Positions 36,915 to 57,420 of a stretch of DNA of 64,000 bases are shown here, one piece after another. The notes beneath the pieces were generated by a model. The model was not told the origin of the DNA. It made no database searches and saw only the letters and a list, made by a program, of their open reading frames with translations. The translations under genes were made by a program, and so were the position numbers. The stretch covers positions 186,001 to 250,000 of IMG/VR virus record IMGVR_UViG_3300044712_001255. The stretch is one strand, 5' to 3'. The first letter of the stretch is position 1. Every line of letters begins with the position of its first letter.

Positions 36915-37070
36915 ATGTATACTGACGAAACGGCAGATTTCTTTTTCGAGTATTCAGAAGCTGAACACATCGTAGTTGGAATGCCACTTTGGTTTCGTGG
37001 TACGTCGTGGCGTGTCGTTAGGAAACGTTGCAGTCACGATGGTATTTGGTTAACACTGACTGCTTGGTGA
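36915..37070 (+). CDS. 51-aa protein, SH3-like pattern (below ORF-track cutoff)
   Basis: EAEHIVVGMPLWFRGTSWRVV; its TGA lies in the next -35. Confidence 0.55.
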   Translation: MYTDETADFFFEYSEAEHIVVGMPLWFRGTSWRVVRKRCSHDGIWLTLTAW

Positions 37071-37101
37071 AGCTCGTCCTCAACAGGAATATATTGAGAC
37101 C

Positions 37102-37500
37102 ATGGAAAATATTCAAGTCACCATCCTCCCCCACCACGAGAACGGCTTCAAGGCCTCGCACATCTGGCTCGATCGCGATCACCCCGCTCGCGCAAAGCTC
37201 ACCAACGACAACGGTCCGAGCTGGGTGCATTGCCCGCTGCGTGGGTTGAAGAAGGAGCACTGGGACAAGGAAGTGTTCGTCGACGGCAAATGGAAGCCCG
37301 CCACACTCACCCGGTGGACCGTGAAGACTGTTGTCGTCACCCTCACCCTCGAGGTGAATTCTGGTGCCGTGGCAGACGACATCGTGAACTCAGTCGCGGC
37401 TCCCGACAGCGATTTCATCGCTAACATCCACGCTTTCTTCAACGAAGGTTACAGTGAGAACGTTGTCAACATCACTGCCGTCGATTCTGAGATGCTGTGA
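37102..37500 (+). CDS. hypothetical protein (leaderless)
   Basis: TATATT-gagacc-ATG. Confidence 0.7.
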   Translation: MENIQVTILPHHENGFKASHIWLDRDHPARAKLTNDNGPSWVHCPLRGLKKEHWDKEVFVDGKWKPATLTRWTVKTVVVTLTLEVNSGAVADDIVNSVAAPDSDFIANIHAFFNEGYSENVVNITAVDSEML

Positions 37501-37532
37501 CAATCCACTCATAGAAGGGTATACTAAAGACC

Positions 37533-37916
37533 ATGGCAAGTCAACTGATCAAGGTCATCTTTTCAGACTCCACCACGTTCTTCCTCTCACCCAATGCGCC
37601 GGCACGGCGGTTCACCTCCGAGGCCGGGTGGGAGTACGGTACCATTCAGGAACGCATCTTCATCAAGGATGACTTCCAGGTGTGGAACGGCGAGGACTGG
37701 GTTCCTGCCCGCCGTACACCCGCGAAGACTAAGGTGCGGCGCAAGTTTGCGGTTGAGGTGGAGTTCGATGTGGACGGTGATCCCACTGACGAGGACGATG
37801 AGGATGTTCGCCTCAAGATTCAAGGAATTGAGATGTCAATGGTTGACGCCATTTCTGGCTGCGCTGATGACAACAAACTGACAGTGCTCACCATGGACCA
37901 CGGTCCCGCTCTGTGA
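37533..37916 (+). CDS. hypothetical protein (leaderless)
   Basis: TATACT-aaagacc-ATG. Confidence 0.7.
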   Translation: MASQLIKVIFSDSTTFFLSPNAPARRFTSEAGWEYGTIQERIFIKDDFQVWNGEDWVPARRTPAKTKVRRKFAVEVEFDVDGDPTDEDDEDVRLKIQGIEMSMVDAISGCADDNKLTVLTMDHGPAL

Positions 37917-37947
37917 CGATCGTCAGCGGGCGAGATAGAGTGGGACC

Positions 37948-38247
37948 ATGGCAAAGAAGCTCCCTGGCATCCCGCTCTACAAGGCGGCTGACATCGACTG
38001 GCATCTCGACACAAAGCCCGTCCAGGGCGTGGTTGAGATCTCCACACTCACTCGCAACAACGCACCCAGCCAGAATTGGAAGACGCGCATCTACCCGGAC
38101 GCGGCTGACATCGGGTTTCACGTCATCGGGCGTACCCGCACCCTCCTGTTCACGCTCATCGACACTGACCAGACCCATGAGGAGACTCTTGCCTGGCACT
38201 TCCGCAATGACGAGACCGGCATCGTGCTCACTGTGTTGAACGACTGA
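37948..38247 (+). CDS. hypothetical protein (leaderless)
   Basis: TAGAGT-gggacc-ATG. Confidence 0.7.
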   Translation: MAKKLPGIPLYKAADIDWHLDTKPVQGVVEISTLTRNNAPSQNWKTRIYPDAADIGFHVIGRTRTLLFTLIDTDQTHEETLAWHFRNDETGIVLTVLND

Positions 38248-38267
38248 AGAAAGGGTATACTGAGACC

Positions 38268-38768
38268 ATGGAAACCAACTCAATCGAAACCATCGCTTCC
38301 CCTGCCCTCTCCACGCTTGCGAAGGCAAACCCCACTCGCGCGGAGCTGATTGACGTCATCATCGACGAGATCGATGCAAAGCTCCAAGCGGCAAATAACG
38401 CTATCAACGCCCGTCTTGAGGAACTCGAGAAGGTGGAGTTCACCGCCGAGGAATGCGCAAACTCTCTCAAGGACGTGAAATACACGTTGGGATCTTACTC
38501 AGGCGCATTGCGTATGAACCTGGGCCGTGGCATGGATCTTGTCGTGGATACGCAGGATGCAAAGGTGTTTGCCGTAGCTCAGGAAATGAAGGAACTCCGA
38601 AAGCAGCAAAACAACATTCGTCACCACAAGTGTCTTGTCGAGCAGCCTCGCAAGATCAAGGCTTACATCACGAAGCGCCTTCTGGAGCAGTCCAAGGATG
38701 GGTGTACTCTTCTCGAGGCACTCAAGAACATCGCTAACACGTTCACGGCATCAACTCCCATCGAGTGA
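38268..38768 (+). CDS. hypothetical coiled-coil protein (leaderless)
   Basis: TATACT-gagacc-ATG. Confidence 0.7.
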   Translation: METNSIETIASPALSTLAKANPTRAELIDVIIDEIDAKLQAANNAINARLEELEKVEFTAEECANSLKDVKYTLGSYSGALRMNLGRGMDLVVDTQDAKVFAVAQEMKELRKQQNNIRHHKCLVEQPRKIKAYITKRLLEQSKDGCTLLEALKNIANTFTASTPIE

Positions 38769-38799
38769 AGGGCAGCTATGGGGGGGATAGAGTGGAATC

Positions 38800-39051
38800 A
38801 TGGTAAAACTCCACATCAATGAAGACGGTTTCTTCGCGATCCTGTACAAGGACGCGGGGGTAGACGACCCTAACAATTCGCTTGATTGCTCGAGTACACT
38901 AACGGAAACACGTGAAGAAGCGTTGAAGTCGCTTGTCGAAAACCGCTCTAAGGTTGCCCAGTTTCTGGAGAAGCGCATTGCACGTGACCAGGCAGAGCTC
39001 GCTGCTGTCAAGGCAGCGTCAATCGATGTGGTCGTGGACATAGTAAGGTAG
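38800..39051 (+). CDS. hypothetical protein (leaderless)
   Basis: TAGAGT-ggaatc-ATG. Confidence 0.7.
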   Translation: MVKLHINEDGFFAILYKDAGVDDPNNSLDCSSTLTETREEALKSLVENRSKVAQFLEKRIARDQAELAAVKAASIDVVVDIVR

Positions 39052-39060
39052 ATTGCTATC

Positions 39061-39606
39061 ATGAAACCAATCAAGACTCCACACGTTCTCACCCTCACCT
39101 CTCCTTCCGCGGTGTCCCTCTGGAAGGGCGAGTTCCTCGGCCAGCTCAGCGACGGCATGTGGGAGAACACCCGTCCGCTCGATCACTGGCGCTTCTGGCA
39201 CCACTGCGACGTCGTCCTGGGTGCGGTGAACAACCTCGACTTCGCCCTGGACAACTGGGAGCGCCCTCGCAAGGTGGGTTACAACTTCGCTGCACTCATC
39301 CCGATCGTCGGCGACCGGATGCTCAAGTGTGGTCGCTTCGGCAAGGCTCTGCCTGAGCTCTTGCGCCACGAGCTTGGGGGTTGCATCCTCGACGGGATGC
39401 CTGACACCCTCGAGGAGTTCACCACCAATCATGCCAAGCGTGGTGACATGCCGCGATATGCTGCTGCGGTCTACGAGATGGTCACCCTCGAGCAAGCTGC
39501 ACGGTACTACGCTACCGCCTACACGATGAAGGAGATGCGCGAGGACATCGAGCGCATCAAGACTGCGCTCCGGTCCGCCAATCCGAAGTCTTCCTTCAGG
39601 GGCTAA
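39061..39606 (+). CDS. hypothetical protein (leaderless)
   Basis: -10 TAGATT begins with the upstream gene's TAG stop. Confidence 0.7.
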   Translation: MKPIKTPHVLTLTSPSAVSLWKGEFLGQLSDGMWENTRPLDHWRFWHHCDVVLGAVNNLDFALDNWERPRKVGYNFAALIPIVGDRMLKCGRFGKALPELLRHELGGCILDGMPDTLEEFTTNHAKRGDMPRYAAAVYEMVTLEQAARYYATAYTMKEMREDIERIKTALRSANPKSSFRG

Positions 39607-39718
39607 CATCCCACCCACGTTCCCTCACGAGGGTCCCTCACGTTGAGGATGGGGTAACCCCTATCCCGCTTGGGGGATTCTCACGTGGGCCGTGAGAGCC
39701 CGATGCGGCGCGGGCGGG
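39607..39718. repeat. dispersed palindromic intergenic element, copy A
   Basis: CCCTCACG motifs; core GGGGTAACCCCTATCCC is the reverse complement of the copy B core. Confidence 0.7.
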
Positions 39719-39737
39719 AAAGGAATATACAGAGATC

Positions 39738-40022
39738 ATGAACGCAAAGAAGACGAAAGTCAAGTTGTTGAAAGCCAAGTCGCTCTACGCCGTCGTGGGG
39801 TATGCCACTACGGGATCAGGAACACTTACCTATCCCGAGGACTTTGATTTTGTGGGTGTCTTCCAGAGTTCTGGTGCTGCGCAAAAGTGTGCTGACCAGA
39901 AGAACAAGGAAGTCATTGAAGAGAATGAAATCGAGTATGATGATGACGATTGTCTCGAAGAAGCGTTGATGAGCTGTGGCGCGATGTGCTACGACGTCGT
40001 CGCGCTCCCGTTCATGGGGTGA
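39738..40022 (+). CDS. hypothetical protein (leaderless)
   Basis: TATACA-gagatc-ATG. Confidence 0.7.
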   Translation: MNAKKTKVKLLKAKSLYAVVGYATTGSGTLTYPEDFDFVGVFQSSGAAQKCADQKNKEVIEENEIEYDDDDCLEEALMSCGAMCYDVVALPFMG

Positions 40023-40024
40023 CC

Positions 40025-40231
40025 ATGAAAATCGTGGGCGCAGGTAATCTACGAGTAGGGATGAGAATCCGAAACGGGTTTGGCATCACCGCGACTGTCA
40101 CGGAGATCGAAGCTCCAAGTGATGAAAGTGATGGTCGTAGCCACATCGTGGTCGATTCTGGTCGCGATGGAGTGAACTCTGGCACCGGGTGGTGGATGAC
40201 ATACGTCCTTGAGCGGTGGGAACTGCTGTGA
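40025..40231 (+). CDS. hypothetical SH3-like protein
   Basis: AGNLRVGMRI...TATVTEI. Confidence 0.55.
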   Translation: MKIVGAGNLRVGMRIRNGFGITATVTEIEAPSDESDGRSHIVVDSGRDGVNSGTGWWMTYVLERWELL

Positions 40232-40262
40232 AAGTCTTGACCTACTGAGATATACTCGAATC

Positions 40263-40505
40263 ATGGCAAAGACCACTGAAGACATCGCCCAACTCGAGTT
40301 CAACACGCGAGGAATCGACTTCCTGGCACCGTGTTGCGAGATTTGTGGCTGCACGATGAGCAAGTCAGTGCAGAAGTGGTGGGTGGAATGGGAGGGAGCA
40401 CCAGAAGGTGATTGGCCTCGCTTTCACCCAGACTGCCTTGACGCGCAGATCGGCAAAGAGAAGTGCGACGGCGTTCCTTACACTGATGTATTCGCGTTCT
40501 CGTGA
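40263..40505 (+). CDS. small Zn-finger-like protein (leaderless)
   Basis: CEIC...HPDC; TATACT-cgaatc-ATG. Confidence 0.65.
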   Translation: MAKTTEDIAQLEFNTRGIDFLAPCCEICGCTMSKSVQKWWVEWEGAPEGDWPRFHPDCLDAQIGKEKCDGVPYTDVFAFS

Positions 40506-40520
40506 GGGTAGAAAAGAATC

Positions 40521-40748
40521 ATGGCAAACAAAATGATCGTTCCCCCGTACATCGCTCAGATCTGCTACCGCGAGGGTGAGCCCATCCTCTCGACGGTGAC
40601 GTTCCTCGAGAGGTCAGACGGCATGTTCTTTGCCGAGGCAGCTCACGACTTCATGCCTACCGAGCAGACCGTCTGCACACTCGAGCAGGCTCAGACCATC
40701 TACACCCGCCTAATGGCGAACGGCTTCATCCTCCCGGGTGTGGCTTGA
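40521..40748 (+). CDS. hypothetical protein (leaderless)
   Basis: TAGAAA-agaatc-ATG. Confidence 0.65.
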   Translation: MANKMIVPPYIAQICYREGEPILSTVTFLERSDGMFFAEAAHDFMPTEQTVCTLEQAQTIYTRLMANGFILPGVA

Positions 40749-40772
40749 TAGTTGAAGGGGTATACTAAGACC

Positions 40773-41732
40773 ATGTCAAGAGAACGAATCAATCCTGCGC
40801 CCGAGCGCGACAAGGTGCTCGACATCCTCAAGAGCCACAAACTCACTCTTCAGATGAAGGTTCACCCTGATTACGCCCGTGGGTCTCGGAAGCGGAATCT
40901 GCCGGTCGTCACCAAGAAGAAAGATAAGTTGTGGAACAGTGCATTTGATGAGATCGTCAGTGATCTGCGGGCGTATCTGGAGCTGTGTCGCCAGACAAGC
41001 TGCTCCACCCAGAACCGCCACATCATCTGCAACGTCTTCGCTAATGACGTTGGTCGCATCGGTACTGTGGAACTCACCTCCGATGAGAACGCCGTGCTGC
41101 GGTGCTGCGAGGGTTACACGGTGTGTGACACCGGTTCGCTGCTCGCTGCCGAGAAGGCCAAGGCTGCCCGCGATGCACTGATCAACAGCGAACGAGCTGT
41201 CATCGCCAATGCTTCTTGCGCTCTCCTGGAGAAGTTCGCAAGCACTGTGATGTTTGCATTCGAGAACACTGGGATTCGGGCAATGCCGAATGTCGAGGTC
41301 TCCTTCGATGCCAAGCGCTGTGCTGAAGTCATCAGGATGATGCGCGACAACCAGACTCGAGTGCTTCCTCCCGGCCAGGCGCCTACACCGGGGTGGTCGT
41401 ATGACATTCCCAAGCTGCGCATCAACTTCATCGCGCTGGGTATGAACGGTAGGCGGATGGATTCGGTGGAGATCTATGTCGATCCCCGCATCAGCATGTC
41501 CGAGTACGACTACTCGGAGAACCAGGTACCAGTGCGGTTCCACACGGGATTCAACTCGTCAGTTACGTGTGATCGTCCTGAGTACCTCAACGAGATCATG
41601 ATGATCCTGGCGCAGGTGAAGAGCATGATCGACTCCATCAATGAGCTGCACCCAACCATCAACGAGGAACTGCACGAGCTCCGCAGCAAGTGGAACGAGG
41701 TTCCCAAGCTGCACCCTGCTCCCGCTGTGTAA
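40773..41732 (+). CDS. hypothetical protein, 319 aa (leaderless)
   Basis: TATACT-aagacc-ATG. Confidence 0.75.
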   Translation: MSRERINPAPERDKVLDILKSHKLTLQMKVHPDYARGSRKRNLPVVTKKKDKLWNSAFDEIVSDLRAYLELCRQTSCSTQNRHIICNVFANDVGRIGTVELTSDENAVLRCCEGYTVCDTGSLLAAEKAKAARDALINSERAVIANASCALLEKFASTVMFAFENTGIRAMPNVEVSFDAKRCAEVIRMMRDNQTRVLPPGQAPTPGWSYDIPKLRINFIALGMNGRRMDSVEIYVDPRISMSEYDYSENQVPVRFHTGFNSSVTCDRPEYLNEIMMILAQVKSMIDSINELHPTINEELHELRSKWNEVPKLHPAPAV

Positions 41733-41761
41733 CGGAATCATCCTGGAGGTATAACAAGACC

Positions 41762-42127
41762 ATGGCAACTACCAAGGAAATCATCGAGAAGGCGTACAAC
41801 ACCGAGTTCCAGAGCGATGCCGCGCTGGCGGATGCAATCGCATACGAGTATGCCTATAGCAACATGGGCAAGTCGCTGGATGAGGTCTTCTATCGCGCCA
41901 ATCCCAAGTGGCTCGAGAATGAGCCCACTCGCATCTTCGTGACTGCATGGCGCGGCCTGTGTGAGGATTGCGGGTGCGAGGGGATCGACATCGAGGATGA
42001 ACTCCTCTATTGGAAGAAGGTGGCTCCCCTCTATGTGAAGGCGATTCGCAAGGCGGGTCTGCCGCTGACGGTGAAGTCGGCGCAGGACGTCAAGGTCAAG
42101 CTTCCCAAGATGGGCAAGCGCCGGTGA
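41762..42127 (+). CDS. hypothetical protein (leaderless)
   Basis: TATAAC-aagacc-ATG. Confidence 0.7.
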   Translation: MATTKEIIEKAYNTEFQSDAALADAIAYEYAYSNMGKSLDEVFYRANPKWLENEPTRIFVTAWRGLCEDCGCEGIDIEDELLYWKKVAPLYVKAIRKAGLPLTVKSAQDVKVKLPKMGKRR

Positions 42128-42158
42128 AGGCAACGGCGGGACGTGATAGACTGAGACC

Positions 42159-42383
42159 ATGAGCTACCTATCACGTCCCCTCGGCAACGGCCGATTCGAG
42201 GTCACCAAGTGGGGCGACGAGACGCGACCCCTGGAGGTCTACACCTTGCAAGACAAGGGAAAACGTGGGTGGGTCTGTGACTCACCCGGGTGTCGTGGCA
42301 AGCGCACCTGCAAGCACGTTGTCATCGTCCAGAAGCGCCTGGCAATGCCGCTGCATGAGGTACCTGATACTCTGATCACATGA
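42159..42383 (+). CDS. SWIM-type zinc finger protein (leaderless)
   Basis: WVCDSPGC...TCKHV. Confidence 0.65.
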   Translation: MSYLSRPLGNGRFEVTKWGDETRPLEVYTLQDKGKRGWVCDSPGCRGKRTCKHVVIVQKRLAMPLHEVPDTLIT

Positions 42384-42805: not shown

Positions 42806-43054
42806 ATGAAGAACATTCTCCAATCAGAAGTCGTTGTATACGCGATGCTTGCATTTGGATTCGTGGCGATGATGACCATCGCATTGATTTGCGGGTTTGC
42901 TGCACCTGCAAAGGCAGCCTCATCGCGCGACGGGGAGTGCCGCAACAAGTCGTGCCCAGCGAACCACGTGAAGGTGTGGGTGGAGGGAACGAGCACGATC
43001 ACAGTCTTCAACATGCGTGACTGTGCGTGCCTGTGTATTCCCGAGGCGCAGTAG
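42806..43054 (+). CDS. small secreted Cys-rich protein
   Basis: Signal/TM helix then CxxxxC...CxCxC; SD GAGG. Confidence 0.55.
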   Translation: MKNILQSEVVVYAMLAFGFVAMMTIALICGFAAPAKAASSRDGECRNKSCPANHVKVWVEGTSTITVFNMRDCACLCIPEAQ

Positions 43055-43067
43055 GTATACTGAACCC

Positions 43068-43274
43068 ATGATAACGGAAGACCAAATCAAGCGACTCGCC
43101 TCTCGCAAAGGTGTGAAGGCAATTGCTGTGGAAAACTTTTTAGGCAGTATCGATTGTAATGCCGATGCGTCAACCGCATTCGGTAACGCTGCCATCGACG
43201 CCAAGCTGTACAAGTGGAACGCTGCCACGGTGCGAGCTATCAACGACGGCATCGCGTTGCACTTCAAGAGGTAA
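43068..43274 (+). CDS. hypothetical protein (leaderless)
   Basis: TATACT-gaaccc-ATG. Confidence 0.7.
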   Translation: MITEDQIKRLASRKGVKAIAVENFLGSIDCNADASTAFGNAAIDAKLYKWNAATVRAINDGIALHFKR

Positions 43275-43640: not shown

Positions 43641-43719
43641 GGTCTTCCTTACAGGATAAGTCGCTGCACTGCTCACCTGCACCGGTGATAATGGTTTGCG
43701 CCTAGGGTATACTGAGACC

Positions 43720-50804: not shown

Positions 50805-51125
50805 ATGGTACCCATTCATGTAGAAGGCGGCAAGGAAACATACTTCCCGTGGTCGGGCACTGCGACTCGCTATCAGGTGGGAGACACAACCTGGTGGCTG
50901 TGGAAGTCGTATGTACCTGAGCTGAAGACCTATATGTGGGCAATCTACGGTCACTCGAGATCGTCTGGATATGTGGGTAGGGGAACCATAAGGCTGGTCG
51001 GTTCAGAGGGCACGCGCCCCATCCGCGAAGCACCGGCAGCCAACGTGACCAACTGCGGACCGGATGTCTGGTACGCTCCCGAGGTGAGCATGTTGGTTAC
51101 CATTGTGAAGCCACAGAAACGTTAG
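50805..51125 (+). CDS. hypothetical protein
   Basis: ORF in array. Confidence 0.55.
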   Translation: MVPIHVEGGKETYFPWSGTATRYQVGDTTWWLWKSYVPELKTYMWAIYGHSRSSGYVGRGTIRLVGSEGTRPIREAPAANVTNCGPDVWYAPEVSMLVTIVKPQKR

Positions 51126-51139
51126 GGTATAAAGAGACC

Positions 51140-51382
51140 ATGGCAAGCAAGACTGCTGTTCGCATCGACATCAGCGTGTACAAGAACACCTACACCGGCG
51201 AGTTCGCAGAGGATGACTCTTTGGAAGTCATTGAGGATGGGTTCGATCACCTCGGCAATGAACGCCCACGGCGGATGGTGGAGCTGACTCTCGTGCAGGC
51301 TCTGAATGAACTGCGTGAAGAAAATCTGCGCTTGGCAGAACGTATTGCTGAGCTCGAGCGAGTGCCATATACTCAACCGTGA
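51140..51382 (+). CDS. hypothetical protein (leaderless)
   Basis: TATAAA-gagacc-ATG. Confidence 0.7.
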   Translation: MASKTAVRIDISVYKNTYTGEFAEDDSLEVIEDGFDHLGNERPRRMVELTLVQALNELREENLRLAERIAELERVPYTQP

Positions 51383-51396
51383 GATATTCTACGACC

Positions 51397-51651
51397 ATGG
51401 AAACCACCCGTCCCACCTCCCTCTCGATCCTCCTCGCTCCCCGCTCGAACGAGGTCTCCTACCTCACCCTCGGCTACGCCCTCACCGGTGCCTCTGACGA
51501 CACGGTGCGCTGCATGCTCGGTGAGCTCATCGGAGATGTGGATGACGGTGACTACGAGGAGGAAGAGTACCGCGTGGGTCAGCTTCTCCCCGAGCTCGCC
51601 CGTGACCTCGACATCCTCGCTGTCTACGCCCAGGAAACGAGCGCGGTGTGA
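51397..51651 (+). CDS. hypothetical protein (leaderless)
   Basis: TATTCT-acgacc-ATG. Confidence 0.7.
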   Translation: METTRPTSLSILLAPRSNEVSYLTLGYALTGASDDTVRCMLGELIGDVDDGDYEEEEYRVGQLLPELARDLDILAVYAQETSAV

Positions 51652-51682
51652 AAGACTCATCCCACCGAGGTATAACAAGACC

Positions 51683-51925
51683 ATGATAAAGATCACGGTT
51701 GCCCCGGCAGGAATCATCGCGGGTCTCTATTCGACACCCTCAGAACTACACTACCTCGGTGTCATGGGGGACTGGTGTACGAATCAGGAAGACGCGATCG
51801 CATCGTGCATCAAGGATCGTGATCACAAGGTGAAACTTCTTAAGAAGAGGGTTCAGAAACTCCAGGATGAAATCAATCTCCTTGAGTCTGCGTCACTCGA
51901 CGTGGGATCGAGTGAAAGACTCTGA
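51683..51925 (+). CDS. hypothetical protein (leaderless)
   Basis: TATAAC-aagacc-ATG. Confidence 0.7.
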   Translation: MIKITVAPAGIIAGLYSTPSELHYLGVMGDWCTNQEDAIASCIKDRDHKVKLLKKRVQKLQDEINLLESASLDVGSSERL

Positions 51926-51946
51926 TCGTTGAAGTATAACAAGACC

Positions 51947-52270
51947 ATGAAGAAGATCAGTCGTTTCTATCCCAAGTGGAGCTTGGGTGTTCGTGCCCAG
52001 GTCGAGGTACTTTACTGGACACTTGGCGTGGTGGGCTTTTTGTTTCTCGTTGTCTACGTACCTGCATACGTGTTGGCGCTGCCACACAAGCTTCTCGAGT
52101 GGGTGGACGAACGCATTGGTGCGTTTTACGCACGTTGTTACAGGACTCGTGAACTCGTCAATGGGCGAGTGCGGCGGAGCGACATCTCCTGTTCGCCAGG
52201 AATGGAGGGTGAACCCAGCAAATACTTCCTGGCGCAGACTGGTGAGCAGGTCGAGTTCCTCGAGGAGTGA
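51947..52270 (+). CDS. membrane protein (leaderless)
   Basis: TATAAC-aagacc-ATG; TM helix. Confidence 0.65.
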   Translation: MKKISRFYPKWSLGVRAQVEVLYWTLGVVGFLFLVVYVPAYVLALPHKLLEWVDERIGAFYARCYRTRELVNGRVRRSDISCSPGMEGEPSKYFLAQTGEQVEFLEE

Positions 52271-52596
52271 ATATGATAGATGAACGAGTGGCTGCGATCT
52301 TCGCGCTCATGATGTATGCGCATGGGTTGTTCACTGGATGGTACTTGAAGCGTTATAAAAACGCTGTGAAGGACTCGTCAAAGGTATATACTGTTTGCGT
52401 CAAAGAAGGCGACGCGGCTGCGTTCTTCGCGTTCCTCACCCGTGAGGATGCCCTGGCGCAGCATAACAAACTTGTCGCACAAGGATATGATTCAACGGTG
52501 TATGCATGTGATGAAGGCCTGATCATTTCTACCGGTCCAGCTGACCTTGCTACGCGATTGACAATTGCCCTTCGGCACGGTGACCCTCATCCGTGA
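52267..52596 (+). CDS. membrane-anchored hypothetical protein
   Basis: N-terminal TM; overlaps upstream stop. Confidence 0.55.
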   Translation: MNMIDERVAAIFALMMYAHGLFTGWYLKRYKNAVKDSSKVYTVCVKEGDAAAFFAFLTREDALAQHNKLVAQGYDSTVYACDEGLIISTGPADLATRLTIALRHGDPHP

Positions 52597-52614
52597 GCGA
52601 GGTAGAACTAGACC

Positions 52615-52818
52615 ATGGCAAAGAAGAACTATCTCATAGGTCGGTCGGCATTCATCAATGACATCCATCTTAGTTCAGGTGAAACTGGGCTTGTGAGGAT
52701 CGTTGCCTTTTCTGTGAAGGGACCCGAATGGGTGATCGTCGAGTACCAACGTGAGGACCATCGACATTTTGTCGGTGACGTCATGGTCATCCCTCTGAAT
52801 TATCTCTCAGTCAGGTGA
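52615..52818 (+). CDS. small SH3-like protein (leaderless)
   Basis: TAGAAC-tagacc-ATG. Confidence 0.65.
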   Translation: MAKKNYLIGRSAFINDIHLSSGETGLVRIVAFSVKGPEWVIVEYQREDHRHFVGDVMVIPLNYLSVR

Positions 52819-53044: not shown

Positions 53045-53272
53045 ATGTACTCTGTTTACCTGTGGCACGAAGACGATCATTTGCTCTGGCTCACGATTCA
53101 CACGTCTCTTGGGTCTGCGCAAGCGTGTTTCGCAGATGCCAAGGGAGACACGTCGTATCCAGAGTCATTGACGCTAGCTGGCCCGTGGGAAGACGGCGAT
53201 AACATCCTGAGTGAGTGCAACAACTGCGATAGCGTGATTGACAACTTCACGCCCGACTACCCCAGCACCTAG
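53045..53272 (+). CDS. hypothetical protein
   Basis: Resembles the 58114..58323 product. Confidence 0.6.
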   Translation: MYSVYLWHEDDHLLWLTIHTSLGSAQACFADAKGDTSYPESLTLAGPWEDGDNILSECNNCDSVIDNFTPDYPST

Positions 53273-53306
53273 TGAAAGACTTGCTTCGTTGTGGTAAGGT
53301 GAGACC

Positions 53307-53534
53307 ATGATCGTAGATGAATTGATGGTTGACGCCAAGGGAGTCATCTGGCACGCGGAGAGCTTTGAGAATTACGTCTGCATCTCACGTCGTGAACCCC
53401 CGCCAAGTCAGTGGCCCAATGATCCTTCCACGTTTATCGCGGTTGAGATTCAGGACGGTGAGGTACACCTGTACCAACGTGTGCCAACGGACGTTGTCCA
53501 GAAGGCGCTGGAACTCTGGACTTGGCGACCGTGA
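53307..53534 (+). CDS. hypothetical protein (leaderless)
   Basis: TAAGGT-gagacc-ATG. Confidence 0.65.
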   Translation: MIVDELMVDAKGVIWHAESFENYVCISRREPPPSQWPNDPSTFIAVEIQDGEVHLYQRVPTDVVQKALELWTWRP

Positions 53535-53568: not shown

Positions 53569-53802
53569 ATGGAAAACGAGCAACTCGTAATTGTTATCAA
53601 GGGTGACTGCGCCTCGGGCAAAACCACGCTGGCACTCGCCTTGCACGACTTCCTTTTGTCACGGGGTTTCACCAACGTTGATGTGAATGACTACGACATC
53701 GACAATGATATCTGTTATCCCGCTCTTCAAGAGTCTCGGATGAATGCGATCAAGGATCGTAAGGTCACCATCAACACAATACAGGGACGTCTTTCTTGGT
53801 GA
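53569..53802 (+). CDS. 77-aa protein with Walker A motif (leaderless)
   Basis: IVIKGDCASGKTTLA. Confidence 0.65.
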   Translation: MENEQLVIVIKGDCASGKTTLALALHDFLLSRGFTNVDVNDYDIDNDICYPALQESRMNAIKDRKVTINTIQGRLSW

Positions 53803-53833
53803 AAGACCCGCCTCACTGAGGTAAAGTGAGACC

Positions 53834-53998
53834 ATGACGAAGACAGAGGCTGTTCAACAACTCGCCCAGGTGAAGCGGATCCTAGCTCGACTCGCAGAGT
53901 GTGCTGAGTTGATACCCGCTGAACATTTTGACATCATCGAGCTGCAACGTCACGCGGACCAGGTCGAGATCGATCCTGAAGAGTGTGAAGAGGGGTGA
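53834..53998 (+). CDS. hypothetical protein (leaderless)
   Basis: TAAAGT-gagacc-ATG. Confidence 0.6.
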   Translation: MTKTEAVQQLAQVKRILARLAECAELIPAEHFDIIELQRHADQVEIDPEECEEG

Positions 53999-54001: not shown

Positions 54002-54217
54002 ATGACGCAGAAGACAGTATCGAAGACCACGGTGACCTGCGACAGGTGTAACGCGGAGGGTGAGCCCTTCAGGGGTCCCTTCGCGAATGGTCACACTACC
54101 ATCACTGCAGACCACAGCGTTCGAAGCTGTCAGGGTGATTCTGGTGGGTGGAAGACGACGTACGACCTTTGTGCGACTTGTCAGGAGTTGTTCCTCCAGT
54201 TCATGGACGGCAAGTGA
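54002..54217 (+). CDS. small Zn-finger protein
   Basis: VTCDRC...DLCATC. Confidence 0.65.
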   Translation: MTQKTVSKTTVTCDRCNAEGEPFRGPFANGHTTITADHSVRSCQGDSGGWKTTYDLCATCQELFLQFMDGK

Positions 54218-54248
54218 AAGTCGCGTGGGGACAGGGTAGAACTAGATC

Positions 54249-54476
54249 ATGGAAACCAACATCGAACTCTACACGAAGTACCTCGCTCAGATCGGTCGCC
54301 GGATAACACCTCCTACTGGTAAGCTTACCGTCTGGGTGGTGCAGTCTGTCATTGCATTCAAGGGACTCGGCGGTGGCATTGAGTTCAGGCTCGAGCTAAC
54401 CGCCAGTGATTGGACCGAGGCACGCTTGACACTTGAGGAGCTAGGCGATCTGGAACGTGGTGTAATCTCCTTTTGA
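54249..54476 (+). CDS. hypothetical protein (leaderless)
   Basis: TAGAAC-tagatc-ATG. Confidence 0.65.
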   Translation: METNIELYTKYLAQIGRRITPPTGKLTVWVVQSVIAFKGLGGGIEFRLELTASDWTEARLTLEELGDLERGVISF

Positions 54477-54825: not shown

Positions 54826-54860
54826 GTGCAGGAACGGCGAGAGAAAGGTATAAACAGACC

Positions 54861-55187
54861 ATGGCGAGCAAGAAGATCAAGTTCCCGCATGACTTTGCGA
54901 ATCGTCCCGATAGCGAGCGACACCGAGGGATGGCCCGGTACGTCTTGGTGAAAGAGCCACTCGAGGCTCACATCACAGTTCAGCGCGCGGACGGCAATAC
55001 GGATGCCGTGTTCGTCTCCGTGTGGATCGGCAAGGGTGCCGTGGGCGAAGGGTGGGGTGGGTACGGTGCCATCACCCACCAGGAAGACCTGCTGCCCATC
55101 ATGAACAAGGCTCGTGAAGACATTCTCGAGTACATGCGTAAGGAAGTGGTGAAGTGGAAGGCAACGCTCAACGCTGCGAAGGTGTGA
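54861..55187 (+). CDS. hypothetical protein (leaderless)
   Basis: TATAAA-cagacc-ATG. Confidence 0.7.
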   Translation: MASKKIKFPHDFANRPDSERHRGMARYVLVKEPLEAHITVQRADGNTDAVFVSVWIGKGAVGEGWGGYGAITHQEDLLPIMNKAREDILEYMRKEVVKWKATLNAAKV

Positions 55188-55218
55188 CGTACTCAATACG
55201 TTGGGGTATACTCTGACC

Positions 55219-55466
55219 ATGGCAGGTATCTCAACGGTGAGCGCCTCTGCATGCCGGGCAACGAGGCTGAGGCTGCGTTCCGCCTTGTCACCTCCCGCCT
55301 AGTGGCCGAGATGGTGGAGAATGAAGAGGAGATCGACATCGATTGCTGTGATGAGTGTTCTTCTTGGACTGTGACTGACCGCCGCTGCTCGTGCGGCAAT
55401 CGTCGGATGGAACTCACCTGGACTGGTACCTTCGAGGACCCTACCTACTACGCCGAGGCTTACTGA
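55219..55466 (+). pseudogene. Zn-finger gene whose leaderless ATG is out of frame (1-nt deletion or sequence error)
   Basis: TATACT-ctgacc-ATG GC AGG TAT CTC...; downstream frame encodes CCDEC...CSC. Confidence 0.5.
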
Positions 55467-55505
55467 CACTGTGATCTTCCGGCTTCCTTAGCTTATACTG
55501 AGACC

Positions 55506-55670
55506 ATGGAAAACCTGATCACCGAGAGCGGACGCTCTGATCTCTCACTCATCAACCGCGTCCGCACCTTGCTGGGATACGGGCTGAATGATGCCGAGAT
55601 TGCGGGCATCCTCAACGTCTCTCGCGGCGATGCGTTCCTCATCATCACTGCCACCAAGATTCTCGAGTGA
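55506..55670 (+). CDS. small HTH-like protein (leaderless)
   Basis: GYGLNDAEIAGILNVSRGDA. Confidence 0.6.
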   Translation: MENLITESGRSDLSLINRVRTLLGYGLNDAEIAGILNVSRGDAFLIITATKILE

Positions 55671-55701
55671 TTCAAACGAGCGCGAAGGGTATAAAGAGAC
55701 C

Positions 55702-56115
55702 ATGGTAAACACCAAAGAGTTCCCCAACGTCGGCGATACCATCACGATCCACAACTGCAACATCGGTAAGGAGTACGACAAAAAGAACTGGGCTTGCACG
55801 CAGCGTGCCCGGAAGGGCAACGCCCTCACCATGAAGGTGACCAAGACGGCGTGGAATGGTGGAGGTCAGGCTCCCGACACCAACTTCCCCAACGGGTGGC
55901 ACGTGACGGCGACTGTCATTGCCACGGGCGAGGTGGTCCACTTCTATCGCAAGGACACGGGTTTCTTCAATGACCACATCACTGTCGCTCCCGGTGAGAT
56001 CCGCCTCGTTGAGGCGGGTGAGGTCACCAAGGCGAATCGGCGGGCCCGCATCGCTGAGATTGATGCCGAAGTCGCTGCCCTCCAGGCCGAGAAGGCTTGC
56101 CTCATTGATCTGTGA
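55702..56115 (+). CDS. hypothetical SH3-like protein with coiled-coil tail (leaderless)
   Basis: FPNVGDTITI; TATAAA-gagacc-ATG. Confidence 0.7.
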   Translation: MVNTKEFPNVGDTITIHNCNIGKEYDKKNWACTQRARKGNALTMKVTKTAWNGGGQAPDTNFPNGWHVTATVIATGEVVHFYRKDTGFFNDHITVAPGEIRLVEAGEVTKANRRARIAEIDAEVAALQAEKACLIDL

Positions 56116-56181
56116 GCCCTCACGAGGGCCTCGCGTCAGCGGGATAGGGGAACCTACCTTTGGCGCTTGAGGCCCTCACGT
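56114..56181. repeat. dispersed palindromic intergenic element, copy C
   Basis: GAGCCCTCACGAGGGC...GGGATAGGGGAACC...GGCCCTCACG. Confidence 0.65.
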
Positions 56182-56231
56182 AGCGAACGGTGACCGGTGT
56201 TTCTCCAGCGGGGGAAGGATATACTCTGATC

Positions 56232-56414
56232 ATGGAACAAACCACGCTCGACAAGATGAAGGTTCTCGGTGAGATGTTGGTGAAGGACAAGGCGACCCCT
56301 GCGCAGTGCCAGGCACTGGCCAAGGATGTTGCCAAGATCACGAACTACAGTTATGCAGACGTGAAGCGCCTGCTCAACTCAGTCTTCCTCATGCACGGAA
56401 TGCCGCTGATCTGA
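56232..56414 (+). CDS. small helical protein, paralog of 47887..48075
   Basis: MEQTTLDKMKVLGE...LAKDVAK...LMHGMPLI. Confidence 0.75.
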   Translation: MEQTTLDKMKVLGEMLVKDKATPAQCQALAKDVAKITNYSYADVKRLLNSVFLMHGMPLI

Positions 56415-56434
56415 CAACGGGATAAGGTGAGACC

Positions 56435-56563
56435 GTGGCAAGTTTCTTCAAGCGACTCGATGACAACAACTGGCTCATGTGCGGGGTGCTACTCACCGGC
56501 ATCGTTGTCATCGTGTGTGTCTTCGCGTACTTCGGCGTTGAAATGCCCCTCGTCATTCGGTGA
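56435..56563 (+). CDS. small membrane peptide (leaderless, GTG start)
   Basis: TAAGGT-gagacc-GTG; TM helix. Confidence 0.55.
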   Translation: MASFFKRLDDNNWLMCGVLLTGIVVIVCVFAYFGVEMPLVIR

Positions 56564-56594
56564 CGTGGCGCGGCAAGAAGGGTAAAACAAGACC

Positions 56595-56906
56595 ATGGCA
56601 AAGACCAAGGCTGAGATTGCAGAGACCCGGAAACTGAAGCGCATGGCGAAGCAGGTTGCTGCGCAGCTTGCACGTGAAGAGGCAGCTGTTGCAGAGCAGG
56701 CGGCACGAGAAGCGCGCCTCGCAAACATCTGCACGCTTGCGCAGCTGCGTACCTTCAATGAGATCCCCTACGACGGTATCTGGCCTGCGGATGAGGGCAC
56801 CCTCGGTGAGTACGTCCTGCGCGAGGAGGTGGAAGCGCTGGTGAAGAACCTCGAGAAGCGCATCGCAGAGGCGCAGCGGCTGCCGTTCCCCGACGAGATC
56901 CGGTGA
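56595..56906 (+). CDS. hypothetical coiled-coil protein (leaderless)
   Basis: TAAAAC-aagacc-ATG. Confidence 0.7.
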   Translation: MAKTKAEIAETRKLKRMAKQVAAQLAREEAAVAEQAAREARLANICTLAQLRTFNEIPYDGIWPADEGTLGEYVLREEVEALVKNLEKRIAEAQRLPFPDEIR

Positions 56907-56936
56907 CGCCAACGAACCACTGGGTATAACAAGACC

Positions 56937-57179
56937 ATGGCAAGGAACCTCAATCACCAGGTCGCAAACGTAGTCCTCTCCCTCCCATGCTGCGTCATGT
57001 CCACCATGGTGGCGTTCGTGGCAATCTTCATCACAGTGGCGGGGGTCACGGGACTCGCCTTCAGCATCCTCCTCGGTGTGGACTGGAACATGGGGTGTGC
57101 CCTTGGCATGGTTGCCTGGTTCGGCGTCTACGTCATCGTGGGCCTCATCATTGAGGTGGTGAAGGCCCGCTCTCACTGA
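56937..57179 (+). CDS. membrane protein, 2 TM (leaderless)
   Basis: TATAAC-aagacc-ATG. Confidence 0.7.
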   Translation: MARNLNHQVANVVLSLPCCVMSTMVAFVAIFITVAGVTGLAFSILLGVDWNMGCALGMVAWFGVYVIVGLIIEVVKARSH

Positions 57180-57193
57180 GGTATAACAAGACC

Positions 57194-57367
57194 ATGCACG
57201 GCAAACACTACTACCACTTCACTGTCGAAGGCACCTACATGGGCAAGAAGACGACGCTCTTCATCAACGCCACGTCTCCTCTCCACGCCATGAAAGCATG
57301 GTGCCGCAAGATGAAAGCAAACATCGAACTCGTCGCGTTCAGCTACGTCAACGTGGACGGCGAGTGA
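57194..57367 (+). CDS. hypothetical protein (leaderless)
   Basis: TATAAC-aagacc-ATG; 57 aa. Confidence 0.65.
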   Translation: MHGKHYYHFTVEGTYMGKKTTLFINATSPLHAMKAWCRKMKANIELVAFSYVNVDGE

Positions 57368-57420
57368 CAGAGACTCTTCCTTAGCTTATACTGATCTCAG
57401 GTAACGGAAACAAAAACAAC

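What the first reader, a model, noticed from the sequence alone, without database searches (positions are those of the whole stretch)
36915..57399. Self-chaining promoter tiles: each gene's TGA stop forms the next gene's -35 box (exact 31-nt gaps)
Seen: the architecture is GTGA(A/C)n-17 nt-TATACT-like-6 nt-ATG, where the TGA of GTGA is the previous ORF's stop. This gives exact 31-nt gaps at 37070/37102, 37916/37948, 38768/38800, 40231/40263, 42127/42159, 45796/45828, 48692/48724, 48912/48944, 51651/51683, 53802/53834, 54217/54249, 55187/55219, 55670/55702, 56563/56595 and 57367/57399 (RNA). At 39049 a TAG stop instead begins the -10 box. Inference: each gene behaves as a portable unit whose ends rebuild a promoter, and the shared tiles could act as micro-homologies for gene gain, loss and shuffling in a host-takeover region.
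Basis: partly seen in the sequence, partly recalled or inferred. Interest (0 to 1): 0.82.

Follow-up and report, generated by a model that had tools for sequence, protein, structure and literature searches.

The report
Leaderless promoter tiles between phage genes
In a 27-kb block of a 324-kb uncultured soil phage, about 50 small genes each carry the same 38-base promoter-like tile ending exactly at their ATG (so the mRNAs would have no leader). In a third of them the previous gene's TGA stop sits inside the tile's -35 box, making this a compact, leaderless variant of the promoter cassettes known to shuffle genes in T4-like phages.

Summary
All 15 listed junctions have gTGA + 31 nt + start. 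In total about 50 tiles lie on the + strand between 32,056 and 59,021, against about 0-1 expected by chance.

The tile reads G-35 T-34 G-33 N, 17-nt unconserved spacer, RRGG, TAnnnT (-12..-7), nAGAYC, ATG(G). This is sigma-70 geometry with the predicted start at the A of ATG. There is no Shine-Dalgarno sequence, no shared RNA fold and no terminator excess.

The conserved upstream element is GTG, not TGA. A at -32 occurs in 14/16 tiles where it serves as the in-frame stop, but in only 9/27 otherwise. The "self-chaining" is therefore best read as compaction: a stop codon overlaid on a fixed TG. The 31 nt is simply 2+17+6+6.

The tile family is widespread in uncultured phages, and one lineage carries canonical TTGACT at the same position. 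In a close pair of that lineage, five gene-sized indels break in the -35 module. In the window, one duplicated block is bounded by tiles.

This is a leaderless variant of PeSL-type mobile promoter cassettes. Transcription starts remain unmeasured.

The parts
31927..31964 (-). Single minus-strand tile (GTGC / TAAATT / GAAACC / ATG 31929) heading the KaiC/DnaB-like ATPase gene 31099-31929. It is divergent from tile 32091.
32056..32093 (+). Tile, first of the + strand array (GTGC, TAAAGG, TAGACC, ATG 32091)
35046..35083 (+). Tile-like site (GTGA, TATTCT, ACCACC, ATG 35081). Its 121-aa ORF overlaps a 295-aa minus-strand ORF, so the gene is uncertain.
35686..35723 (+). Tile (GTGC, TAAAAC, CAAACC, ATG 35721)
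37067..37104 (+). Tile. The TGA of GTGA is the stop of ORF 36915-37070 (gap 31).
37497..37535 (+). Tile with a 7-nt discriminator (GTGACA-17-TATACT). Its TGA is the stop of 37102-37500 (gap 32).
37913..37950 (+). Tile. TGA of GTGA is the stop of 37533-37916 (gap 31).
38233..38270 (+). Tile with GTGT. The upstream stop lies in the spacer (gap 20).
38765..38802 (+). Tile. TGA of GTGA is the stop of 38268-38768 (gap 31).
39026..39063 (+). Weak tile (ATGT, TAGATT). The TAG stop of 38800-39051 forms the first 3 bases of the -10 hexamer (gap 9).
39703..39740 (+). Tile (ATGC, TATACA, GAGATC, ATG 39738)
40228..40265 (+). Tile. TGA of GTGA is the stop of 40019-40231 (gap 31).
40486..40523 (+). Tile (ATGT, TAGAAA). 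Upstream stop in the spacer (gap 15).
40738..40775 (+). Tile (GTGT, TATACT, AAGACC). Gap 24.
41727..41764 (+). Tile (GTGT, TATAAC, AAGACC). Gap 29.
42124..42161 (+). Tile. TGA of GTGA is the stop of 41762-42127 (gap 31).
43033..43070 (+). Tile (GTGT). The upstream ORF reads through TGT in the -34 frame and stops at a TAG in the spacer (gap 13).
43685..43722 (+). Tile (GTGA, TATACT, GAGACC). Intergenic; the upstream gene ends 79 nt before the ATG.
44187..44224 (+). Weaker tile (GTGC, TATCTT) heading the 179-aa gene that is conserved in the 190-kb relative.
44742..44779 (+). Degenerate tile (TATAAC AAGAAT ATG 44777). No GTG box.
45061..45098 (+). Tile (GTGT, TACAGT, ACGATC)
45793..45830 (+). Tile. 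TGA of GTGA is the stop of 45530-45796 (gap 31).
46825..46862 (+). Tile (GTGT, TATACT) heading the trypsin-like secreted protease gene 46860-47555.
47851..47889 (+). Tile missed by ORF calling (GTGA, TATCTT, AGGACC, ATG 47887). Its TGA is the stop of 47591-47854 (gap 32).
48061..48098 (+). Tile (ATGC, TAAGGT, GAGATC). It is part of the duplicated block shared with 56400-56437.
48304..48341 (+). Tile (GTGT, TATACT, AAGACC). Gap 21.
48689..48726 (+). Tile. TGA of GTGA is the stop of 48339-48692 (gap 31).
48909..48946 (+). Tile (GTGACA-17-TATACT). TGA is the stop of 48724-48912 (gap 31).
49153..49190 (+). Tile (GTGT). The upstream ORF reads through TGT and stops at a TAA in the spacer (gap 19).
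49603..49641 (+). Shifted tile (GTGA at -36, 7-nt discriminator, ATG 49639)
49772..49809 (+). Weak tile (ATGC, TAGGAT, CGAACT)
50317..50354 (+). Weak tile (GTGT, TATCTA, GAGATC)
51105..51142 (+). Tile (GTGA not used as a stop; upstream TAG at gap 14)
51362..51399 (+). Tile (GTGC, TATTCT). Gap 14.
51648..51685 (+). Tile (GTGAAAGAC box). TGA is the stop of 51397-51651 (gap 31).
51912..51949 (+). Tile (GTGAAAGAC box). The TGA is out of frame; the upstream stop is at gap 21.
52580..52617 (+). Tile (GTGA out of frame; gap 18)
53272..53309 (+). Tile (TAG stop immediately followed by the TGA of GTGA; gap 34)
53799..53836 (+). Tile. TGA of GTGA is the stop of 53569-53802 (gap 31).
54214..54251 (+). 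Tile. TGA of GTGA is the stop of 54002-54217 (gap 31).
54826..54863 (+). Tile (GTGC) with an 8-bp hairpin spanning the -35 box
55184..55221 (+). Tile. TGA of GTGA is the stop of 54861-55187 (gap 31).
55471..55508 (+). Tile (GTGA, intergenic; gap 39)
55667..55704 (+). Tile. TGA of GTGA is the stop of 55506-55670 (gap 31).
56197..56234 (+). Tile (GTGT) heading the paralogue of gene 47887-48075
56400..56437 (+). Weak tile, the only one with a GTG start (ATGC, TAAGGT, GAGACC). It is the duplicated copy of tile 48061-48098.
56560..56597 (+). Tile. TGA of GTGA is the stop of 56435-56563 (gap 31).
56903..56939 (+). Tile with a 16-nt spacer. TGA of GTGA is the stop of 56595-56906 (gap 30).
57159..57196 (+). 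Tile (GTGA out of frame; upstream stop at gap 14)
57364..57399 (+). Tile without a start codon (GTGA, TATACT, GATCTC, then A57399 GG). Its TGA is the stop of 57194-57367. It shows that the tile does not need an ATG.
57421..57524 (+). tRNA-like fold (7-bp acceptor stem, T-loop GGTTCAAATCC) downstream of the ATG-less tile. Found only at relaxed ARAGORN thresholds; not confirmed.
57798..57835 (+). Tile (GTGA, TACAAC, TGGACC; gap 35)
58079..58116 (+). Tile (GTGA, TATAAC, AAGACC; gap 38)
58983..59021 (+). Last tile (GTGT, TATACT, AAGACC + C, ATG 59019) heading a 195-aa ORF. It has a 7-nt discriminator.
47896..48104 (+). Duplicated block, copy A. It comprises the gene body from about codon 4, the stop, the downstream tile and the first bases of the next gene. 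Homology to copy B starts just after one tile and ends just after the next.
56235..56443 (+). Duplicated block, copy B (72% nt, 66% aa identity to copy A)

Best explanation
The tiles are sigma-70-family promoters fused directly to start codons. Each is built from a -35-like box (GTGN at -35..-32), a 17-nt unconstrained spacer, an RRGG/extended -10-like G at -14, a TAnnnT -10 hexamer at -12..-7 and a 6-nt nAGAYC discriminator ending in pyrimidine. The A of ATG sits where RNA polymerase would start.

Each small gene would therefore be transcribed as its own leaderless mRNA. Because leaderless translation needs a 5'-terminal AUG, nearly every gene needs its own promoter, and this produces the chain.

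Tight packing lets upstream coding regions run into the next promoter. When the reading frame allows, the fixed TG of the -35 box is completed to TGA and serves as the stop. That gives the exact 31-nt gap (2 + 17 + 6 + 6).

The conserved tile ends also serve as homology for recombination that inserts, deletes and duplicates gene cassettes, as PeSL cassettes do in T4-like phages.

Shown: the sequence architecture, its statistics, its conservation in relatives, and breakpoints at tiles. Inferred: promoter activity, a start at the A, leaderless translation, early timing, and which sigma factor reads the tile.
For: 1. Two-block geometry. GTG at -35..-33 is present in 34-35 of 38 sites although it was not searched for. 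The spacer is unconserved. T-12 and A-11 are near-invariant. The generic sigma-70 scan picks several tiles as GTGACA-17-TATACT.

2. Sister lineage. L010/L150/L091/L114 carry canonical TTGACT at the same position, in front of TAAGGT-AAGACC-ATG. There are about 38 such promoters in 14.6 kb.

3. Conservation of the tile, not the genes. 27 of 120 metagenome loci and several IMG/VR contigs carry 3-14 tiles each. The genes behind the tiles are unrelated to each other. Only about 6 are shared with the closest relative.

4. Not an RNA or translation signal. 39 tiles have no consensus RNA fold. ATG-less copies exist: 57399 in the window and four ATC copies in L074.

5. Leaderless features. Tile genes lack a Shine-Dalgarno sequence at a usable distance and start with ATG in 47 of 48 cases. 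Non-tile genes carry GGAGG/GAGGA-type sites or 4-nt stop-start overlaps and often use GTG or TTG.

6. No terminator excess in the block.

7. Compaction origin of the TGA. A at -32 occurs in 14/16 tiles when it is in frame with the upstream ORF and in 9/27 otherwise (p = 0.0012). 14 of the 18 GTGA boxes that are reached by an ORF are used as its stop (p = 1.4e-4). In the L150 lineage, stops fall at gaps 44, 39 and 31, which are the TGA, TAA and TGA of cTGAttTAAtcctTTGAC.

8. Recombination. Five indels of 259-1087 bp between L091 and L114 have breakpoints in the -35 module and are flanked by direct repeats (about 22 nt at three junctions, 88 nt at one, 6 nt at one). Unrelated genes share an identical tile plus four codons in L070 and L007. 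The window has a tile-bounded duplicated block.

9. Precedents. -10 motifs adjacent to ORFs give leaderless mRNAs in Deinococcus-Thermus (PMC12340547, PMC4007540). Leaderless SigA promoters are predicted in Cluster O mycobacteriophages (PMC4351075). PeSL cassettes are described in PMC2839356 and PMC4122927.
Against: - There are no transcript data. No RNA run holds the phage, and the one read-laying run showed only the same strain in DNA contigs.
- The host is unknown. The genome scan gave only chance-level single hits.
- The -35 box has G rather than T at -35. The window's box matches TTGACA at 3-4 of 6 positions.
- Position -7 is T in only 19 of 38 tiles and C in 12, which is unusual for primary-sigma -10 elements.
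- The discriminator nAGAYC and the first codons (ATGGCA/ATGGAA) are more conserved than ordinary host promoters need. This could point to a dedicated phage factor.
- RRGG at -16..-13 could act as a distant Shine-Dalgarno site on read-through transcripts.
- In the window's own lineage, recombination at tiles rests on a single duplicated block.
Confidence: 0.7

Rival explanations
1. The tiles are promoters, but they are read by a phage-directed polymerase form rather than the unmodified host primary sigma. This could be a phage-encoded sigma factor, a sigma-appropriating activator that binds the GTG(C)AAAGT box, or a phage RNA polymerase.
For: - In most relatives the upstream box is a long non-canonical motif, (G)GTG[C/T]AAAGT[T/C].
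- The window keeps GTG, with AAGWC in a subset.
- Position -7 is often C. The discriminator and the first codons are unusually conserved.
- The strict tile occurs nowhere else in the 324-kb contig, as expected for one temporal class.
Against: - The L150 lineage uses canonical TTGACT-17-TAAGGT with the same proximal half, which argues for the host primary sigma at least there.
- The two-block layout with a 17-nt spacer excludes T7-like and phiKZ/AR9-like polymerase promoters, as far as those are known (own knowledge).
- No sigma or RNA polymerase gene was seen in the window.
Confidence: 0.2
2. The tile is an RNA-level signal inside long polycistronic transcripts. It would be a non-Shine-Dalgarno ribosome entry or Kozak-like context (ACCAUGG), or a processing site, and not a promoter.
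For: - The sequence immediately around the ATG is conserved: A-3, C-2, C-1 and G+4.
- RRGG lies at -16..-13.
- No terminators separate the genes.
Against: - An invariant GTG lies exactly 21 nt upstream of the -10-like hexamer, across an unconserved spacer.
- A sister lineage has canonical TTGACT at that place.
- The tiles have no shared RNA structure.
- Tiles without any start codon exist.
- Non-tile genes of the same block carry ordinary Shine-Dalgarno sites.
Confidence: 0.07
3. The TGA stop is itself a required, selected part of the -35 element, so that each gene's end functionally rebuilds the next promoter as a designed self-chaining unit.
For: - 17-18 junctions use the box TGA as the stop.
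- The -34 frame is over-represented among ORFs that reach the box: 16 of 29, p = 0.013.
- A is the consensus base at that position of TTGACA.
Against: - A at -32 is only about 33% where it is not a stop.
- About 30 tiles work with GTGT, GTGC or ATGY, or with the stop elsewhere.
- The closest relative uses the box stop in only 3 of 13 tiles, and GTGCA lineages never do.
- TTGACA contains TGA anyway, so the overlap comes for free.
Confidence: 0.12
4. The repeats are remnants of serial duplication of one ancestral gene together with its upstream region, without present function.
For: One paralogous pair and one weak pair exist in the block.
Against: - 73 of 75 proteins show no similarity to each other.
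- Tile conservation stops within a few codons of the ATG.
- The same tile is kept in distant relatives in front of different genes.
Confidence: 0.02

Closest known systems
PeSL (promoter-early stem-loop) mobile regulatory cassettes of T4-type phages (Arbiol et al. 2010, PMC2839356; Comeau et al. 2014, PMC4122927)
   Same: - About 50 repeated sigma-70-like promoter motifs per genome, concentrated in a hyperplastic block of small ORFan genes.
- Each motif starts with the upstream gene's stop codon and ends at the next start codon.
- Indels between close relatives have their breakpoints in the motif.
- Stem-loops between or over the -35 box are present in the closest relative, L074.
   Different: - There is no Shine-Dalgarno site and no 5' UTR; the tile ends at the ATG.
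- In the window itself, stem-loops are not enriched and terminators are not enriched.
- The stop codon lies inside the -35 hexamer rather than in an AT-rich region upstream of it.
- The phage lineage is different and the host is unknown.
- Mini-circles are untested.
-10 motif adjacent to ORFs giving leaderless mRNAs in Deinococcus-Thermus (PMC12340547; D. deserti, PMC4007540) and in Actinobacteria (own knowledge)
   Same: A TAnnnT hexamer lies a few bases upstream of the start codon and there is no ribosome-binding site. A -35 element 17 nt upstream enhances expression.
   Different: Those are scattered host genes with a weak or absent -35. Here a stereotyped 38-nt tile with a fixed discriminator and fixed first codons repeats about 50 times in tandem in a phage.
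Leaderless phage promoters: Thermus phage phiYS40 middle/late genes (Sevostyanova et al. 2007, recalled from memory; the paper could not be opened) and predicted leaderless SigA promoters of Cluster O mycobacteriophages (PMC4351075)
   Same: [quoted passage not shown]
   Different: Cluster O has three such promoters per genome (PL1, PL2 and PR2, PMC4351075). None is described as a chained array with stop codons embedded in the -35 box, or as a recombination substrate.
Integron gene cassettes (own knowledge)
   Same: Arrays of small, unrelated, same-strand genes separated by a repeated element at which cassettes are gained and lost.
   Different: Integron attC sites are recombinase targets, and cassettes are mostly promoterless and read from one common promoter. 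Here the repeat is itself a promoter, and no integrase was seen in the window.

Membership tests
Sigma-70-type (two-hexamer) promoter | -35-like and -10-like elements separated by 16-18 nt | tested here: met
   GTGN at -35..-32 and TAnnnT at -12..-7 give a 17-nt spacer in about 44 of 50 tiles; the remainder have 16 or 18 nt, or no GTG box. Observed 36 against 0.01 expected.
Sigma-70-type (two-hexamer) promoter | Conserved T-12, A-11 and T-7 in the -10 hexamer and TTG in the -35 hexamer | tested here: inconclusive
   T-12 and A-11 were required by the site search, so their near-invariance is not independent evidence. T-34 and G-33 are 35/38. Position -35 is G rather than T, and -7 is T in only 19/38. 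A sister lineage has full TTGACT.
Sigma-70-type (two-hexamer) promoter | Transcription initiates about 7 nt downstream of the -10 hexamer | not testable with these tools
   No RNA run holds the phage. The one read-laying run gave only DNA contigs.
Leaderless gene | The start codon sits at the predicted +1, with no Shine-Dalgarno site at a functional distance | tested here: met
   The ATG lies 6 nt after the -10 hexamer in about 44 tiles. An SD-like 4-mer within -14..-4 occurs in 5 of 48 tile genes. Several non-tile genes carry GGAGG or GAGGA.
Leaderless gene | The mRNA 5' end coincides with the AUG, and translation occurs from that end | not testable with these tools
   Requires 5'-end mapping and reporter assays.
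PeSL mobile regulatory cassette | A repeated strong promoter motif upstream of ORFan genes in a hyperplastic region | tested here: met
   About 50 tiles in 27 kb. Of 52 proteins, 50 have no Pfam family. Only about 6 genes are shared with the closest relative.
PeSL mobile regulatory cassette | A stem-loop terminator/attenuator within the motif | tested here: not met
   Window tiles do not fold better than shuffles (p = 0.14), and terminators are not enriched. The closest relative, L074, does have strong hairpins over the -35 box or spacer (p = 0.002).
PeSL mobile regulatory cassette | A Shine-Dalgarno site plus start codon at the 3' end of the motif | tested here: not met
   The start codon is present but no SD is. 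The tile ends at the ATG.
PeSL mobile regulatory cassette | Indel and replacement breakpoints between close relatives fall in the motif | tested here: inconclusive
   Met in the sister lineage: L091 versus L114 has five indels in the -35 module. In the window's lineage there is only one tile-bounded duplication. No near-identical second genome was found.

The most novel reading that the evidence does not exclude
A widespread clade of uncultured soil and freshwater phages expresses its whole accessory (probably early) gene set as monocistronic leaderless mRNAs. These come from mobile promoter-plus-start-codon cassettes. The non-canonical upstream box (GTG(C)AAAGT), the fixed discriminator and the fixed first codons would be read by a dedicated phage factor. 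This would make phage translation independent of Shine-Dalgarno/30S initiation during host shut-off. The same tile would serve as the recombination site that lets any new ORF be plugged in, already equipped with promoter and start codon.
Probability: 0.3. Interest if true: 0.75.

Novelty: new variant of a known kind. Interest (0 to 1): 0.6.

Why it matters
If the tiles start transcription at the ATG, this would be the densest array of leaderless genes I know of in any phage: about 50 in 27 kb. It would be a natural test bed for how leaderless translation is used during infection.

It would also extend the PeSL idea, in which promoters double as recombination sites that shuffle ORFan genes, beyond T4-like phages to a large uncultured clade, in a form where promoter, start codon and the previous stop codon are fused.

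Practically, the tile gives exact gene starts for dozens of tiny ORFans that gene callers mis-start. An example is 47851 versus 47887. It also gives a search key for related phages in metagenomes.

Tried and rejected
- **Nucleotide searches of the block against 50,697 phage records.** Near and distant modes both found no match. A 56-nt family tile found only chance hits with E >= 1.
- **Protein searches.** GroEL and the AAA ATPase have no close cultured relative; the best matches are 45% and 30% identity.
- **Host inference.** The tile pattern in 185,579 genomes gave 53 single hits, as expected by chance, and none with several tiles. The UvdE atlas look-up returned mostly viral clusters. The host remains unknown.
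- **Sequencing runs.** Only two DNA metagenomes hold the phage. X2 carries the same strain as identical low-depth contigs, so it gave no indel or RNA information.
- **RNA families and structure.** Rfam and ARAGORN at default settings found nothing at 57399-57533. The fold is not better than shuffles. Only relaxed ARAGORN gives a tRNA-like shape.
- **Paralogy as the source of the repeats.** Rejected.
- **Stop-codon reassignment or read-through fusion.** Rejected by reasoning: a 31-nt gap plus the stop equals 34 nt, which is out of frame with the next ATG.
- **Archaeal BRE/TATA reading, T7-like promoter reading and eukaryotic-virus (Kozak) reading.** Considered and rejected on geometry, the bacterial-type GroEL and the PHROG matches.
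- **The phiYS40 paper.** It could not be opened.

Full report
**Source.** The window is part of IMGVR_UViG_3300044712_001255, a 324,468-bp viral contig. Loci fetched from that contig match the window at 100%. The only sequencing runs that hold it are two rhizosphere DNA metagenomes. The window encodes a GroEL-type chaperonin, a UvdE endonuclease, ATPases and one tRNA-Met. It has no nucleotide match and only distant protein matches among 50,697 phage records. It is therefore an uncultured jumbo phage of unknown host.

**Checking the observation.** At 57399 the start is AGG instead. The TAG at 39049 is both a stop codon and the start of a -10-like TAGATT.

A loose core pattern finds 42 sites on the + strand and one on the - strand, against 0.87 in dinucleotide shuffles. 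Of the 42, 36 also carry GTG at -35..-33, which was not searched for and has 0.01 expected.

About 50 tiles lie between 32,056 and 59,021, all co-directional with the genes. One divergent tile at 31929 sits on the other strand. The strict tile pattern occurs nowhere else in the 324-kb contig.

**Anatomy of the tile.** Aligned on the A of ATG as +1:

| Position | Content |
|---|---|
| -35..-33 | G, T, G (34-35 of 38) |
| -32 | A 22, T 10, C 5, G 1 |
| -31..-17 | unconserved |
| -16..-13 | RRGG |
| -12..-7 | TAnnnT-like (T-12 and A-11 were fixed by the site search; -7 is T 19, C 12) |
| -6..-1 | nAGAYC |
| +1 onward | ATG, then G at +4 in 29/38 and an A-rich stretch |

The 39 tiles share no RNA secondary structure. 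The block has no excess of intrinsic terminators.

Of about 75 genes in the block, about 48 have a tile. About 10 start at or next to the upstream stop by a 4-nt RTGA overlap or similar. Most of the rest have degenerate tiles or ordinary Shine-Dalgarno sites such as GGAGG, GAGGAG or AGAGGT. Tile genes start with ATG in 47 of 48 cases and lack a Shine-Dalgarno site at a usable distance.

The encoded proteins are unrelated to each other, apart from two pairs. Almost all are without any known family.

**What the tile is.** The two-block layout, with its fixed 17-nt spacer and a -10 hexamer 6 nt before the start codon, is the geometry of a sigma-70-family promoter whose +1 is the A of the ATG. That makes it a leaderless gene.

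Relatives give independent support:

- The closest relative, a 190-kb contig (L005/L009/L074), has 19 tiles in 12 kb with GTG[T/C/A] boxes. Four are followed by ATC instead of ATG.
- Many other contigs carry (G)GTG[C/T]AAAGT[T/C] ... RGG-TAnnnT-ARRAYC-ATG. These include 27 of 120 metagenome loci, several from lake samples.
- One lineage (L010/L150/L091/L114) has canonical TTGACT at exactly the position of the window's GTGA, followed by 17 nt, TAAGGT, AAGACC and ATG. It has about 38 promoters in 14.6 kb.

The ATG-less copies, the canonical -35 in a sister lineage and the absence of any RNA fold all argue that the tile acts on DNA as a promoter and not on RNA as a translation signal.

Leaderless translation needs a 5'-terminal AUG (established knowledge; see also PMC12340547). 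This explains why almost every gene has its own tile, and why the exceptions use stop-start overlap or a Shine-Dalgarno site. None of this has been measured. No RNA data exist for this phage.

**The TGA-in-the--35 claim.** The 31-nt gap is arithmetic: 2 remaining bases of the -35 hexamer, 17 of spacer, 6 of the -10 hexamer and 6 of discriminator.

The conserved bases are GTG. Where the upstream ORF is in the frame of -34..-32, position -32 is A in 14 of 16 tiles. In the other 27 tiles it is A in 9 (Fisher p = 0.0012). Of 18 GTGA boxes reached by an upstream ORF, 14 are its stop, against one third expected (p = 1.4e-4). The frame itself is only modestly over-represented, at 16 of 29 (p = 0.013).

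In 13 further tiles the upstream ORF runs through the box in another frame and stops inside the spacer or the -10 hexamer, at gaps of 9-29 nt. Three more box stops have 30- or 32-nt gaps: 37533, 47887 and 56937.

In relatives the habit is weak or absent:

- 3 of 13 tiles in L074 use the box stop.
- 2 of 12 in L070 use it, through the TAA of GTGTAAGT.
- None do in the GTGCA lineages, where stops lie 36-54 nt upstream.
- In the TTGACT lineage, stops cluster at gaps 44, 39 and 31. These are the TGA, TAA and TGA of cTGAttTAAtcctTTGAC, one per reading frame.

The stop in the box is therefore best explained as packing: a stop codon overlaid on fixed promoter bases. TTGACA itself contains TGA. It does not look like a functional requirement of the promoter.

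L091 and L114 are 88-97% identical and differ by five gene-sized indels of 406, 319, 259, 289 and 1087 bp. The junctions lie in the tile's upstream module (CTGATTTAATCCTTTGACTTCT), and the inserted cassettes are flanked by direct repeats of it: about 22 nt at three junctions, 88 nt at one and 6 nt at one.

In L070 and L007, pairs of unrelated genes share an identical tile plus their first four codons and then diverge completely.

In the window, the one clear paralogous pair (47896-48104 and 56235-56443) is a block that begins just after one tile's ATG and ends just after the next tile's ATGGCAA. The unit is a gene body plus the downstream tile.

Only about 6 of 75 block genes are shared with the closest relative, while the tiles are kept.

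**Comparison with known systems.** This matches the published PeSL model for T4-type phages. That model describes about 50 strong sigma-70-like promoter cassettes per genome in hyperplastic ORFan regions, beginning with the upstream stop codon and ending at the next start codon. They mediate indels and modular shuffling (PMC2839356, PMC4122927).

Differences from PeSLs:

- PeSLs carry a stem-loop terminator and a Shine-Dalgarno site.
- The window's tiles have neither.
- The closest relative does have strong hairpins over the -35 box or spacer. This suggests the window's version is a compacted derivative.

Leaderless promoters next to ORFs are known in Deinococcus-Thermus (PMC12340547, PMC4007540). 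They are also predicted in a few actinophage promoters (PMC4351075). I found no description of a chained array of this density.

**Verdict.** The feature is best filed as a new, leaderless and compacted variant of mobile promoter cassettes, present in a broad uncultured phage clade. Open questions are the actual transcription starts, which sigma factor or phage factor reads the unusual GTG(C)AAAGT box and the conserved discriminator, the host, and the timing of expression.

Noticed in passing
window 57421-57524: A tRNA-like fold lies 22 nt downstream of the ATG-less tile. It has a 7-bp acceptor stem, the T-loop GGTTCAAATCC and a long extra arm or 13-nt insert. Default ARAGORN and Rfam do not call it. 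It could be a degenerate or atypical tRNA, or a small RNA driven by the tile.
   Followed up: partly
window 33617-33650, 34049-34082, 36885-36912, 42762-42804: A second repeated upstream motif (TCGATCGTCG, partly tandem) lies in front of non-tile genes 33638, 36915 and 42806. It may be another promoter or operator class.
   Followed up: no
window 47851-47889: Mechanical ORF calling starts this gene at GTG 47851, overlapping the upstream TGA. The paralogue alignment and a tile show that the likely start is ATG 47887. The tile can be used to correct the starts of small genes.
   Followed up: yes
window, first codons of tile genes (e.g. 37948, 40263, 48724, 56595): N-termini of unrelated proteins are stereotyped (MAK, MAN, MEN, MET, MDN) because +4..+9 is part of the conserved tile (ATGGCAAA / ATGGAAAC). 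Together with -3..-1 this reads ACCATGG, a Kozak-like string, probably by coincidence.
   Followed up: partly
L074 9480-9600 and 11900-12000: In the closest relative, some tiles are followed by ATC and an approximately 70-nt leader that ends in a second, weaker tile with ATG (tandem promoters). An identical ATCGGACAG start occurs twice.
   Followed up: partly
L074 9930-9985, 11390-11440, 8730-8775, 12350-12395: Perfect GC-rich hairpins overlap the -35 box or fill the spacer of the relative's tiles (for example a 22-nt palindrome centred on CACGTG). This layout is PeSL-like and is largely absent from the window.
   Followed up: yes
L104 (14.8 kb metagenome locus): This locus carries 14 tiles on one strand and 13 on the other, so tile arrays can be divergent blocks in some relatives.
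   Followed up: no
window 1-64000: Base composition changes sharply. It is 43-47% G+C at 14-26 kb (minus-strand small genes), 54-59% in the tile block at 32-58 kb, and 45-50% again after 58 kb.
   Followed up: no
window 46860-47555 and 53569-53802: These are the only block proteins with family matches. One is a trypsin-like secreted protease with a lipoprotein-like signal peptide. The other is probably the small P-loop NTPase-like protein; the hit was assigned to this gene by its Walker-A motif, because the batch scan does not name the member.
   Followed up: partly
window 35046-35446: A good tile (ATG 35081) heads a 121-aa ORF that lies entirely inside a 295-aa minus-strand ORF (34586-35473). 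Which of the two is the real gene was not resolved.
   Followed up: no
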